Source of the DNA: Sminthopsis crassicaudata
Taxonomy: Eukaryota
Direction of reading: 5' to 3'
DNA: 64,000 nt
Assembly (NCBI RefSeq): GCF_048593235.1
Contig: NC_133618.1
Location: forward strand, 178,215,162 to 178,279,161
Shown: piece by piece, positions 52,129 through 54,395 of the stretch
Position numbering within the stretch: position 1 is the stretch's first letter
Layout of the letters: every line of letters starts with the position of its first letter
The notes under the pieces: generated by a model
What the model saw: the letters and a program-made list of their open reading frames with translations, nothing else
Database searches by the model: none
Told to the model about the DNA's origin: nothing
Made by a program: the position numbers and the translations under genes

Positions 52129-52300
52129 ATGAAGTCCCTCTGTCTCCTCTTTGCTCTTCTATTCTTGGCTGCCCAGATCACAGCTGAGAAACCAGCAGAA
52201 GATACACTGCTTAATTCTCAGGCTGAAGATGCAAAACAAACTCAAGTGAAAGTGAATTCTGAAGGCCCACAAAAATTCTTCCTGCCAAGTCATACTTTTG
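52129..52300 (+). CDS. DEFA: Alpha-defensin coding exon 1 (signal peptide plus propiece): MKSLCLLFALLFLAAQITA|EKPAEDTLLNSQAEDAKQTQVKVNSEGPQKFFLPSHTF(G)
   Basis: 172-nt exon, phase-1 donor TG|GTAAGA; 19-aa hydrophobic signal followed by a ~39-aa acidic/polar propiece, the alpha-defensin architecture. DEFA is a family-level label, not an orthologue call. Confidence 0.93.
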
Positions 52301-53309
52301 GTAAGAGGACATCGTATGAGGGAAGCTTGGGAGATTTTAGGCATTGGGATGATCAGGTCTAAGAGAGTGAAGAGTGAACAGGTCTGTAAAGTAATCATAT
52401 ACAGGAATCATTTATTCAGAGCTAGAAGGGATCTTGTATCAAATCCAACTCTCTCAATATACAGAGCACAAAATGTAGATATCCAGGCCACAGATAGTAG
52501 GTTCAGAAATAGGATTTATTTAAACCCTGGACCTCTGATTACAGAATCAGAATTCTTTCTACCATATCATGCTGACCATCTCTCATCTAGACCGAGAGGA
52601 AGAACACTACTATGGAATGATAGTCCATATTGCTACTCCTTTCTCTCTGTTTTGTTCATAATTATAGTTTTTTTCTTTGTTGGATAGCAAATCTCATACT
52701 TTCAGACAAATGTTGAACCCCTTTTGCAAGGATACTTCCTGCTGGTTCATTTGTGTGCTTCAAGGGAAAGCAAATAAAGGATGAAATCAAAAATTTTAGT
52801 TAGGAACTGGGGAGAGGATATGTCTCCTTATGGATTTTTCTGAGCTCCTGTCAAGAAGTAAGTTCTACTTCTTTTAGGGTCAGACAGAAAGTGTTAAGTC
52901 CTAAATTTAGTCCTATAGGGATGAAACCTACCAGCTTCCAACAGCCTCTAATTTAGCAGTAAAGGATGACTGGTTCTTTGGAAGCAGAGCTTGTAGAAGA
53001 TTCTCAAATGAGATAATGGTCCTAGGTAATTAGTTTTCACCTCCACTCACCTAGATGATACCTACTTAGGAGAGGATCAAATTTATATGGTCATCTGCTT
53101 TGCAACAAAATCTGCATGTGTATTGAGTAAGATCTCTCTTTCCCAGTTATCCTCTAATCAAAGCCCAGTTATCTGCACAATTTCTTGACTACCTGAGCCC
53201 CAACCCTCCACTTATATCCCAGGGAGTACTAAGCTGCTTATCCAGTAGCTTCCTTTCTTTAAGATAATCACCCAAAGCTCCAGTTCTTTTCATATCCAGG
53301 AGTTTCTTC

Positions 53310-53555
53310 TTCTTTTTTTAATTATTGTTTTATTTTTTCTGATTATACATGTATATTAACTTTTAAAATACACATTTCTTTATGAATTATGTTGGGAGAG
53401 AAAAATCAGAATAAAAGGGAAAAGCCATAAAAGAAAAAAGAAAACAGAAAAACAAAATAAACAACCATGTGTTATTTTATATTCAATCTCTATAGTTCTC
53501 TTTCCGGATGTAATTCTCTTTTCTATCCAAAGTTTATTGGGATTGCCTTGGGATA
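53310..53555 (-). mobile_element. L1 3'UTR fragment inside the defensin intron (a MIR/MAR piece also lies at ~52415-52560)
   Basis: Reverse-strand marsupial L1 tail (ccaaagtttattgggattgccttg). Confidence 0.75.
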
Positions 53556-53940
53556 TCCAAGACTTTCTGGGAAAAAAGATTGGCATCTATTGCTGCAAGC
53601 CAAAGTTCCCAGCCTTTCTCCCTAATTGCTGATTGTACTGTTCCTTCCCTAGTTCTTTCTTAATCTATTCCTATGGTATCAAATGCAAGATAATCCTTCA
53701 CTCGGAGTGGTAAATCATAGAAAAGAAAAGAAGTCACGAGTCAGGAAATCCAGTCAGCTCCAAAAACCTTCTGAACCTCACATCCTTCCTCACACATAGG
53801 GGTCCTTTCCCAGCAATCTCAGCACTGGAGGGCACCCTCTCTTAACAGCCTGAAAACCAGTTTGCCAGCTCTATTGCAGTCTAACAGTAACCTTGATCTT
53901 CAGGAGGGCTGGGAGTATCCTATGTATACTGAGAGAAGAT

Positions 53941-53957
53941 TAAGTAAGTAAGTAAGT

Positions 53958-53993
<36 letters not shown>
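53941..53993. repeat. (AAGT)n(AAAG)n compound tetranucleotide microsatellite in the defensin intron
   Basis: Directly visible. Confidence 0.9.
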
Positions 53994-54282
53994 GATGCTA
54001 GGTGGTGGAGGCAATTTCCACCTGGGCTCCTTAGGGGCATTGATAGGACAGTGAATATATTATAGAGCACAATAAGGTTGTGAATGTGAATGCATCTTTA
54101 TCTTCATCAATAACACCTTCATTCCCATCCCCATTGTTTGTATTCATCTCATTTAGACCTATGACTATGTTGTTGGGATTACATGCCTTTGGTAATGGGG
54201 GGACAATTCTATGGATCAAACTTCAATTCTGCTTTTAGGTATCCCATGATAGTGGAAAGTAACTGAAAATCTCTCCTTTTAG

Positions 54283-54395
54283 GTCGGACCAGGGGGTTAA
54301 CTGCCTGCAGTTGCTTCTGTCAACAACGTTGTGGTTATGCTGAAAGTCGATGGGGGTCCTGTGGCAACAAACTCCTTTGCTGCAGATGTAGATGA
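54283..54395 (+). CDS. DEFA: Alpha-defensin coding exon 2: (G)RTRGLTACSCFCQQRCGYAESRWGSCGNKLLCCRCR*, an eight-cysteine mature peptide
   Basis: Acceptor ctctccttttag|GT in phase 1. Joined CDS is 285 nt = 94 aa + stop, with no frameshift. Defensin core C-x3-C-x3-E-x3-G-x-C-x5-CC. Confidence 0.93.

What the first reader, a model, noticed from the sequence alone, without database searches (positions are those of the whole stretch)
52129..54395. Intact alpha-defensin with eight cysteines: a symmetric extra Cys pair may add a fourth disulfide
Seen: the mature region GLTA-C-S-C-F-C-QQR-C-GYAESRWGS-C-GNKLL-CC-R-C-R has 8 Cys. The extras lie exactly two residues before canonical C1 and two residues after canonical C6. 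Established: alpha-defensins pair C1-C6, C2-C4, C3-C5, so the N- and C-termini are adjacent antiparallel strands. Inference: the extra pair is placed to form a fourth, ladder-like bond (I-VIII, II-VII, III-V, IV-VI), giving a more rigid, protease-resistant peptide; inter-chain dimers (as in rodent CRS peptides or rattusin) are the alternative. From memory, marsupial alpha-defensins, some with 8 Cys, have been reported, so this locus may already be catalogued; I do not know its connectivity or activity to be established.
Basis: partly seen in the sequence, partly recalled or inferred. Interest (0 to 1): 0.85.

Follow-up and report, generated by a model that had tools for sequence, protein, structure and literature searches.

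The report
Conserved eight-cysteine marsupial alpha-defensin gene
This is a real, spliced and expressed marsupial alpha-defensin gene, already catalogued in koala as PhciDEFA2, whose two extra cysteines have been kept together since before marsupials and monotremes split and probably form a fourth disulfide bond that nobody has yet mapped.

Summary
Exon 1 (52129-52300) and exon 2 (54283-54395) join GT..AG into a 94-aa prepropeptide with eight Cys in its mature part. The extra Cys sit at -2 from canonical C1 and +2 from C6. Spliced RNA contigs with exactly this junction occur in four runs from four studies.

The gene is not new. It is the orthologue of koala PhciDEFA2 and of NCBI models in devil, wombat and sugar glider. 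All eight Cys are invariant, and only two mature positions vary across five species. Against devil, the mature part has 0 non-synonymous and 5 synonymous changes.

- In a 1.84-billion-protein search, the only other relatives are monotreme 'defensin-A4(-like)' proteins.
- Echidna and platypus each have a copy with the same eight-Cys framework.
- The platypus paralogue DefA4 lacks both extra Cys together.
- An AlphaFold model superposes on solved alpha-defensins (HD6, 0.6-0.7 Å). Its first and last strands are extended to include both extra Cys.

An intramolecular fourth disulfide (I-VIII) is therefore the best reading, at about 0.6. It rests on indirect evidence only, because connectivity, native N-terminus, tissue and activity are untested. 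Covalent dimers or a rearranged pairing remain open. The scan's other notes on this gene are on this same window, not on other DNA.

The parts
51969..51987 (+). Two WWCAAAGG (TCF/LEF-like) motifs 11 bp apart, about 45-60 bp upstream of the TATA box; a possible Wnt/TCF control element (a lead only)
   Evidence: sites at 51969-51976 and 51980-51987. The motif is not enriched in the window overall (17 found, 19 expected). Both sites are identical in devil.
52031..52038 (+). TATA box (TATAAATA) of the promoter
   Evidence: Read. RNA contigs begin 36-60 bp downstream, at 52074-52091. The 250 bp before the ATG are 96% identical to devil, against about 88-89% in the intron and flanks.
52074..52128 (+). 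5' UTR, contiguous with the first coding exon (no separate non-coding exon seen)
   Evidence: Spliced contigs start at 52074 (X11), 52077 (X8) and 52091 (X10).
52129..52300 (+). Coding exon 1: signal peptide (about residues 1-19, inferred), propeptide, and the first base of codon 58
   Evidence: Weak Pfam Defensin_propep match (E 0.013, below cutoff). The 172-nt length and phase-1 intron match devil, koala DEFA2 and a platypus canonical alpha-defensin.
52301..54282 (+). Intron (1982 nt, GT..AG, phase 1), holding a repeat fragment (about 53330-53630) and an (AAGT/AAAG)n microsatellite (about 53940-53995)
   Evidence: Joint 52299/54282 (cut +1), GT..AG, in X8, X10, X11 and X18. 88.2% identical to the devil intron.
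54283..54395 (+). Coding exon 2: end of the propeptide (GRTR), the eight-Cys defensin domain and the TGA stop
   Evidence: Identical protein in devil. 6 nt differences, all synonymous.
54294..54392 (+). Putative mature peptide (residues 62-94, 33 aa, net charge about +4). The N-terminus after GRTR is inferred, not shown
   Evidence: Sequence. AlphaFold model pLDDT 84 with three strands. Best structural matches are alpha-defensins.
54306..54308 (+). Codon of extra Cys I (residue 66), two residues before canonical C1
   Evidence: Conserved in all marsupial, echidna and platypus eight-Cys homologues; His in platypus DefA4.
54387..54389 (+). Codon of extra Cys VIII (residue 93), two residues after canonical C6
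   Evidence: Conserved as above; Tyr in platypus DefA4.
54396..54484 (+). 3' UTR with an ATTAAA polyadenylation signal at 54461-54466
   Evidence: Spliced contigs end at 54481-54484. Signal read.

Best explanation
The locus is a functional two-exon gene of the alpha-defensin family in a dasyurid marsupial (about 89% nucleotide identity to Tasmanian devil). It is the orthologue of koala PhciDEFA2. It encodes a signal peptide, a roughly 40-residue propeptide and a C-terminal cationic domain of about 33 residues. That domain adopts the three-stranded alpha-defensin fold with the canonical bonds II-VII, III-V and IV-VI (that is, C1-C6, C2-C4, C3-C5). The two additional Cys continue the antiparallel pairing of the first and last strands by one more step. 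They most likely form a fourth, intramolecular I-VIII disulfide lying parallel to C1-C6, as in the cross-strand ladders of theta-defensins and protegrins. This would double-clamp the two termini. Shown here: the gene model, splicing and expression, orthology, strong purifying selection, deep conservation of the Cys pair and its paired loss. Inferred: signal and propeptide cleavage sites, the fold (prediction only), the I-VIII bond, its stabilising effect and antimicrobial activity.
For: - Gene and transcript.
- Orthologues with all eight Cys are found in devil, wombat and sugar glider and in koala PhciDEFA2. Koala DEFA2 has only one synonymous exonic SNP among 418 genomes.
- Purifying selection: dN/dS is 0.07 against devil. 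The mature part has 0 non-synonymous and 5 synonymous changes against devil, and 1 and 5 against koala.
- The only further relatives in an exhaustive HMMER search are monotreme proteins. Echidna XP_038626677 and a platypus 'defensin-A4-like' protein share the framework C-X-C-X-C-X3-C-X9-C-X6-CC-X-C.
- Tree: the short-loop clade is separated from canonical monotreme alpha-defensins at 100/99. Six-Cys DefA4 is sister to the two monotreme eight-Cys genes (94/96), so both extra Cys were lost together on one branch.
- The Glu at C3+4 and the Gly at C4-2 of alpha-defensins are kept.
- AlphaFold model: pLDDT 84, strands 8-13, 21-26 and 29-35. Strand ends coincide with Cys 8 and Cys 35 in the register (i+j=43) fixed by C10-C33.
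- The top structural hits are all alpha-defensins at 0.6-1.4 Å; beta-defensins mostly score 2.1-2.5 Å.
- Known covalent-dimer relatives have odd Cys counts (rattusin 5, CRS 9 or 11; PMC5366907), whereas this peptide has 8.
Against: - No coordinates, mass or chemistry were available, so no S-S distance or pairing was measured.
- AlphaFold has seen alpha-defensins, and the alignment had only 6 rows.
- The six-Cys control (DefA4) also gives long terminal strands (9-13 and 30-35). Strand extension is therefore not specific to the Cys pair.
- Pfam does not recognise the mature domain. It recognises the propeptide only below threshold.
- The C4-C5 loop (5 residues) and the C2-C3 loop (3) are outside the classic alpha spacing, and the salt-bridge Arg is not at C2+1.
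- The paired loss is a single evolutionary event.
- HD5, with an even Cys count, can still form disulfide-exchanged dimers in vitro (PMC5366907).
Confidence: 0.6

Rival explanations
1. The canonical three disulfides form within each chain. Cys66 and Cys93 bond between chains, giving a covalent homodimer (I-VIII' and VIII-I', or I-I' and VIII-VIII') or heterodimers, as in rodent CRS peptides and rattusin.
For: Alpha-defensin-related peptides with extra Cys are known to form covalent dimers, and HD5 can do so too (PMC5366907). The two Cys sit at the exposed ends of the edge strands in the model. Alpha-defensins commonly dimerise (entry titles).
Against: Obligate covalent dimers in that family have odd Cys counts. 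Here the two Cys face each other within one chain, in the register set by C1-C6. Only one such gene is present in the window, so a heterodimer partner is not evident.
Confidence: 0.15
2. The eight Cys adopt a non-canonical overall pairing, for example a beta-defensin-like core or a shifted ladder such as I-VII/II-VIII. The peptide would then be a distinct scaffold rather than an alpha-defensin plus one bond.
For: The C4-C5 loop of 5 residues and the C2-C3 loop of 3 fall in the beta-defensin range rather than the classic alpha range (the same point is made in note s1-179251). Pfam Defensin_1 does not match. HBD4 is among the better structural hits.
Against: The N-terminal C-X-C, the Glu at C3+4 and the Gly at C4-2 are alpha-type. 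The precursor has a long propeptide and the same gene structure as canonical monotreme alpha-defensins. Its closest six-Cys relative, DefA4, is a plain C-X-C...CC alpha framework. Alpha-defensins dominate the structural ranking with much lower rmsd.
Confidence: 0.15
3. The extra Cys are not structural. They stay reduced or redox-active, or bind metal, so as to modulate activity. Alternatively they are conserved for propeptide processing or for a specific receptor contact.
For: The very strong conservation of the whole mature peptide and of propeptide residues 29-61 hints at a specific interaction beyond membrane attack.
Against: The peptide is secreted through the oxidising ER. Unpaired thiols next to a disulfide promote scrambling. 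Both Cys were lost together in DefA4, as expected for a bonded pair.
Confidence: 0.05

Closest known systems
Koala PhciDEFA2 and the NCBI models XP_012395376 (devil), XP_027696027 (wombat), XP_068963421 (sugar glider)
   Same: They are orthologues: 94 aa, same two-exon structure, 91-97% identity and eight identical Cys positions. The mature peptide is identical to devil's and differs at one or two residues in the others.
   Different: This copy comes from another dasyurid (3 amino-acid differences from devil, all before the mature part). [quoted passage not shown]
Monotreme defensin-A4 group: echidna XP_038626677, platypus 'defensin-A4-like' (P0006), platypus OaDefA4 (P0C8A4)
   Same: They are the only other hits in 1.84 billion proteins (E 2e-4 to 3e-4). 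They have a two-exon gene with a phase-1 intron and a short C4-C5 loop. The first two have the same eight-Cys framework.
   Different: Identity is only 33-35%. Exon 1 is 190 nt rather than 172, and the loop is 6 residues rather than 5. OaDefA4 has His and Tyr at the two extra positions, giving six Cys.
Classical alpha-defensins (HD6, HD5, HNP1-4, cryptdins, rabbit RK-1)
   Same: The predicted fold superposes at 0.6-1.4 Å. They share the C-X-C...CC framework, the Glu and Gly signature residues and the signal-pro-mature precursor. RK-1 is the best PDB sequence hit and also has a 3-residue C2-C3 loop.
   Different: The classical peptides have six Cys, a 9-residue C4-C5 loop (8 in RK-1) and an Arg at C2+1. 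Their mature parts usually evolve fast, whereas this one is almost frozen. Pfam thresholds are not met.
Rattusin and mouse CRS peptides (alpha-defensin-related covalent dimers)
   Same: They have alpha-defensin-type precursors and a Cys count different from six.
   Different: Their Cys counts are odd (5, 9, 11), the canonical framework is lost, and they form intermolecular disulfides (PMC5366907). Here the whole six-Cys core is retained and a symmetric pair is added.
Theta-defensins and protegrins (laddered beta-hairpins)
   Same: The proposed II-VII and I-VIII bonds would be two adjacent rungs (i/j and i-2/j+2) of a cross-strand ladder. This comparison rests on my own knowledge and was not tested here.
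   Different: Those peptides are 16-18 residues long, cyclic or hairpin-only. They are not three-stranded defensin domains, and they are not homologous in precursor (protegrin) or in processing (theta-defensin).

Membership tests
alpha-defensin | N-terminal C1-X-C2 and C-terminal C5-C6 doublet within a six-Cys core | tested here: met
   C-F-C ... CC is present and aligns to C1, C2, C5 and C6 of RK-1 and HNP1.
alpha-defensin | Classic loop lengths: C2-X4-C3, C3-X9-C4, C4-X9-C5 | tested here: not met
   The loops are 3, 9 and 5 residues. A 3-residue C2-C3 loop also occurs in RK-1, koala DEFA1 and monotreme canonical genes. The 5-6-residue last loop is specific to this clade.
alpha-defensin | Signature residues: Glu at C3+4, Gly at C4-2 (beta-bulge), Arg at C2+1 (salt bridge) | tested here: inconclusive
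   The Glu and Gly are present and conserved down to monotremes. The Arg is at C2+3, with Gln at C2+1.
alpha-defensin | Precursor: signal peptide, long propeptide and C-terminal mature domain; two coding exons with the mature domain in the last | tested here: met
   Exon 1 is 172 nt with a phase-1 intron, identical to a platypus canonical alpha-defensin that carries Pfam Defensin_1. The propeptide is charge-neutral overall rather than anionic (counted).
alpha-defensin | Pfam Defensin_propep (PF00879) or Defensin_1 (PF00323) at gathering score | tested here: not met
   Defensin_propep scores 14-20 bits against a cutoff of 23.6 (E 9e-4 to 0.06). There is no Defensin_1 hit.
alpha-defensin | Three-stranded alpha-defensin fold | tested here: met
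   This rests on prediction only. The model has pLDDT 84. The top 16 VIA hits are alpha-defensins: HD6 Z 4.3 and rmsd 0.6 Å over 28 residues, HNP1 0.6 Å over 25.
alpha-defensin | Disulfide connectivity C1-C6, C2-C4, C3-C5 | not testable with these tools
   This needs MS or NMR on folded peptide.
alpha-defensin | Location beside other alpha-defensin genes in the defensin cluster | tested here: met
   Koala DEFA1 lies 5.3 kb from DEFA2. Platypus and echidna eight-Cys genes lie 9-10 kb from canonical alpha-defensins. In this window a decayed DEFA1-like exon 2 lies at about 45664-45776 on the minus strand (weak).
beta-defensin | C1-X4-8-C2 N-terminal spacing, short or absent propeptide, C1-C5/C2-C4/C3-C6 fold | tested here: not met
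   No spacing of 4-8 residues is available before the core (the pattern scan gives only 'alpha'). The propeptide is long. Beta-defensins rank below alpha-defensins, mostly at rmsd 2.1-2.5 Å.
CRS / rattusin covalent-dimer peptides | Odd Cys number with loss of the six-Cys alpha framework | tested here: not met
   The peptide has eight Cys and an intact core. The family description is in PMC5366907.

The most novel reading that the evidence does not exclude
The eight-Cys, short-loop peptides of marsupials and monotremes would be a separate, ancient alpha-defensin lineage with four disulfides. It arose before the monotreme-therian split and was lost or unrecognisably changed in eutherians. It has been held almost invariant for tens of millions of years because it acts on one specific conserved target (a receptor or a defined microbial molecule), not as a generic membrane-active peptide. 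Its beta-like loop lengths might preserve an intermediate step of the beta-to-alpha transition.
Probability: 0.3. Interest if true: 0.7.

Novelty: new member of a known kind. Interest (0 to 1): 0.5.

Why it matters
Alpha-defensins are textbook fast-evolving, six-Cys, three-disulfide peptides. This lineage breaks both habits. It carries an extra, symmetrically placed Cys pair, and its sequence is almost frozen from dasyurids to koala. The Cys framework is shared with echidna and platypus.

If the I-VIII bond is real, it would be a natural 'double-clamped' alpha-defensin. That makes it a ready template for salt- and protease-stable peptide design, and a simple system for testing what terminal clamping does to defensin function.

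The conservation also suggests that marsupial and monotreme innate immunity uses a defensin with a constrained, possibly specific, task that eutherians lack. The gene itself is already in catalogues, so the value lies in the testable structural and evolutionary hypothesis rather than in discovery of the locus.

Tried and rejected
- **Paralogues in the window.** tblastn with both exons, blastn of the whole gene and Cys-pattern scans found no second intact defensin. The pseudogene proposed at 15700-17750 (note s1-179213) shows no detectable similarity to this gene.
- **Pfam on exon 2 and on full-length homologues.** There is no Defensin_1 hit.
- **Word-indexed protein searches.** Searches with exon 1 and with the devil protein returned only the one marsupial cluster. 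No opossum or eutherian orthologue appeared in any search. No mammalian genome collection was available for tBLASTn.
- **DNA of orthologous loci.** The wombat and sugar-glider loci could not be fetched because the files were too large.
- **Papers not held.** Whittington 2008, Belov 2007, Jones 2017 and Peel 2024 could not be read. I therefore cannot say whether the eight-Cys pattern was already remarked on in print.
- **Model coordinates.** These are not exposed, so Cys-Cys distances could not be measured.
- **Six-Cys control model (DefA4).** It did not discriminate.
- **Tissue of expression.** Run metadata are coded, so tissue could not be read.
- **Beta-defensin membership, theta-defensin-type processing and CRS/rattusin-type scaffold.** All three were considered and rejected (see Membership tests and Closest known systems).
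Full report
**1. What is in the sequence**

- The ATG is at 52129 and exon 1 is 52129-52300 (172 nt).
- The donor is GTAAGA. A pyrimidine-rich acceptor ends at 54282.
- Exon 2 is 54283-54395, with TGA at 54393-54395.
- The product is 94 aa. Its C-terminal part has eight Cys in the pattern C-X-C-X-C-X3-C-X9-C-X5-CC-X-C.
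- A TATA box sits at 52031-52038 and an ATTAAA signal at 54461-54466.
- The gene is single-copy in the 64-kb window (tblastn, blastn, pattern scan).

**2. It is transcribed and spliced as predicted**

Assembled contigs of public RNA runs carry the joint 52299/54282 (cut +1, GT..AG). They span about 52074 to about 54484 with no mismatches. This holds in X8, X10 and X11, which come from three studies, and in X18 from a fourth.
- The only variant is a synonymous G>T at 54356 in X8.
- The 5' UTR is contiguous with exon 1. The gene therefore has the two-exon layout that, from my own knowledge, is typical of enteric rather than myeloid alpha-defensin genes.
- X1 and X5 show only low, unspliced coverage, which is pre-mRNA or DNA carry-over.
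- Tissue labels were not available.

**3. Identity**

A word-indexed search with exon 1 found one 90% cluster. It holds devil XP_012395376, wombat XP_027696027 and sugar glider XP_068963421, named 'neutrophil antibiotic peptide NP-1-like' or 'defensin-A4-like'.
- All three are 94 aa with the same eight Cys.
- The devil locus (L001) aligns to the window at about 86-90% over flanks and 88.2% over the intron. The window therefore comes from another dasyurid.
- The supplement of PMC11711154 gives koala PhciDEFA2, taken from the Jones et al. 2017 catalogue. Its translation is the same protein with one mature-region change.
- That paper reports a single synonymous exonic SNP for PhciDEFA2 in 418 koalas. 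It also states that koala defensins have not been tested in vitro.

**4. Selection**

| Comparison | Region | Synonymous | Non-synonymous | dN/dS |
|---|---|---|---|---|
| Window vs devil | Whole CDS | 11 | 3 | 0.07 |
| Window vs devil | Mature 33 codons | 5 | 0 | 0 |
| Window vs koala | Mature 33 codons | 5 | 1 | 0.04 |

- Across five species of two orders, only two mature positions vary (Q/H and N/S). Propeptide residues 29-61 vary at one position (D/E).
- The 250 bp upstream of the ATG are 96% identical to devil, which is above the intronic level.
- This is strong purifying selection, unlike the usual picture of alpha-defensin mature peptides (my own knowledge).

**5. Deeper relatives**

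A profile of the marsupial proteins was searched by HMMER against 1.84 billion representatives. It gave only two further hits (E 2.4e-4 and 3.3e-4): platypus OaDefA4 (P0C8A4) and echidna XP_038626677. A profile search of the word-indexed database added a platypus 'defensin-A4-like' protein.
- The echidna protein and this second platypus protein have the same eight-Cys framework, with a 6-residue last loop.
- OaDefA4 has the six-Cys core only, with His and Tyr at the two extra positions.
- In platypus (L003) the genes lie in tandem, flanked by canonical six-Cys alpha-defensins with a 9-residue last loop. One of these carries weak Pfam Defensin_1.
- Echidna (L002) has the eight-Cys gene 9.5 kb from a canonical gene.
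- All these genes have two coding exons and a phase-1 intron.
- A maximum-likelihood tree separates the short-loop clade from the canonical monotreme genes with 100/99 support. It places DefA4 as sister to the echidna and platypus eight-Cys genes (94/96).

The simplest history is an eight-Cys ancestor that predates the monotreme-therian split, with one branch (DefA4) losing both extra Cys together. The tree has few, short sequences and no eutherian outgroup, so this is a reasoned inference, not a proof.

**6. Family membership**

For alpha-defensin membership:
- The precursor architecture and gene structure fit.
- The C-X-C...CC core is present.
- The Glu at C3+4 and the Gly at C4-2 are conserved.
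- The best PDB sequence hits are RK-1, HD6 and HD5, although weak (E 0.15-5).
- The predicted fold fits (see section 7).

Against strict membership:
- Pfam thresholds are not met.
- The loops are 3 and 5 residues instead of 4 and 9.
- The Arg is displaced from C2+1. The same point is made in note s1-179251, and I verified it from the sequence.

I file it as a divergent alpha-defensin lineage.

**7. Structure and the fourth bond**

AlphaFold2 was run on the exon-2 peptide with a six-row alignment. It gave pLDDT 84 and strands at 8-13, 21-26 and 29-35, where Cys are at 8, 10, 12, 16, 26, 32, 33 and 35.
- Foldseek and VIA-align rank alpha-defensins first: HD6 at 0.6-0.7 Å, HNP4 at 0.9-1.0 Å, Crp4, cryptdin-14, HD5, and HNP1 at 0.6 Å with chain 1..30 on model 9..33.
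- Beta-defensins fall lower, mostly at 2.1-2.5 Å.
- Z-scores are small (4.3 or less), as expected for about 30 residues.
- With C1-C6 equal to 10-33, the antiparallel register i+j=43 pairs residue 8 with residue 35. The first and last strands begin and end exactly there.

This is consistent with a I-VIII rung next to II-VII. However, coordinates are not exposed, so no S-S geometry was measured. The six-Cys control DefA4 also shows long terminal strands (9-13 and 30-35), so the model alone does not discriminate.

The stronger arguments are evolutionary and arithmetic:
- The pair is co-conserved.
- The pair was lost together.
- The Cys total is even, whereas the covalent-dimer relatives rattusin and CRS have 5, 9 or 11 Cys (PMC5366907).

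**8. Verdict**

The gene is real, expressed, strongly constrained and already catalogued. The fourth-disulfide interpretation is the best available reading (about 0.6) but has not been demonstrated. Covalent dimerisation (about 0.15), a rearranged pairing (about 0.15) and non-structural thiols (about 0.05) remain open.

Interest is moderate. The finding is a well-posed, cheaply testable structural hypothesis on a known gene, with an evolutionary angle that specialists may find unexpected.

Noticed in passing
window:45664-45776 (- strand); devil L001:3322-3440 (-): A decayed exon 2 of a canonical (koala DEFA1-type) alpha-defensin lies 6.4 kb upstream, in divergent orientation. It is 65% identical in nucleotides to koala DEFA1 exon 2 over 113 nt. 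Most Cys are replaced and there is an in-frame stop, and the same lesions occur in devil. The match is statistically weak (E 0.79) but syntenic in both dasyurids.
   Followed up: partly
window:51969-51987: Two WWCAAAGG (TCF/LEF-like) motifs lie 11 bp apart just upstream of the TATA box and are conserved in devil. The motif is not enriched window-wide (17 found, 19 expected), so this is only a lead towards Wnt/TCF (Paneth-type) regulation.
   Followed up: partly
window:53330-53630 (intron): A repeat fragment has very high RNA word depth in every run (up to about 26,000), with many loose ends and short 'joints'. It behaves like a dispersed transposon-derived sequence expressed from many loci, not like part of this gene.
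   Followed up: no
window:15700-17750: The scan's other note (s1-179213) calls this an inverted alpha-defensin pseudogene. Sensitive blastn against the whole gene region found no colinear similarity (best E 0.13 inside 15700-17750; 0.048 in the wider 14000-19500 stretch searched). Neither the defensin Cys-pattern scan nor the tblastn searches found anything there.
   Followed up: partly
L003 (platypus) 8286-8453 and L002 (echidna) 623-760, 8286-8425: Defensin-A4-like first-exon remnants were found. Those at about 8286-8455 in both monotreme loci carry stops, and the echidna piece at 623-760 has lost its start. They lie between the intact genes of both monotreme clusters. Echidna seems to have lost its DefA4 orthologue.
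   Followed up: partly
koala PhciDEFA1 (PMC11711154 supplement): The neighbouring koala alpha-defensin has seven Cys (an extra Cys directly after C4). [quoted passage not shown] This contrasts with the invariant DEFA2.
   Followed up: no
window CDS vs koala and devil: Synonymous divergence to koala (dS 0.20) is no larger than to devil (dS 0.20), despite the far older split. This may be small-sample noise (11 changes each) or constraint on synonymous sites.
   Followed up: no
window:52186-52311 (propeptide residues 20-61): The propeptide is charge-neutral overall (6 acidic, 6 basic residues), unlike the anionic propieces of classical alpha-defensins. Its C-terminal two-thirds are as conserved as the mature peptide.
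   Followed up: no
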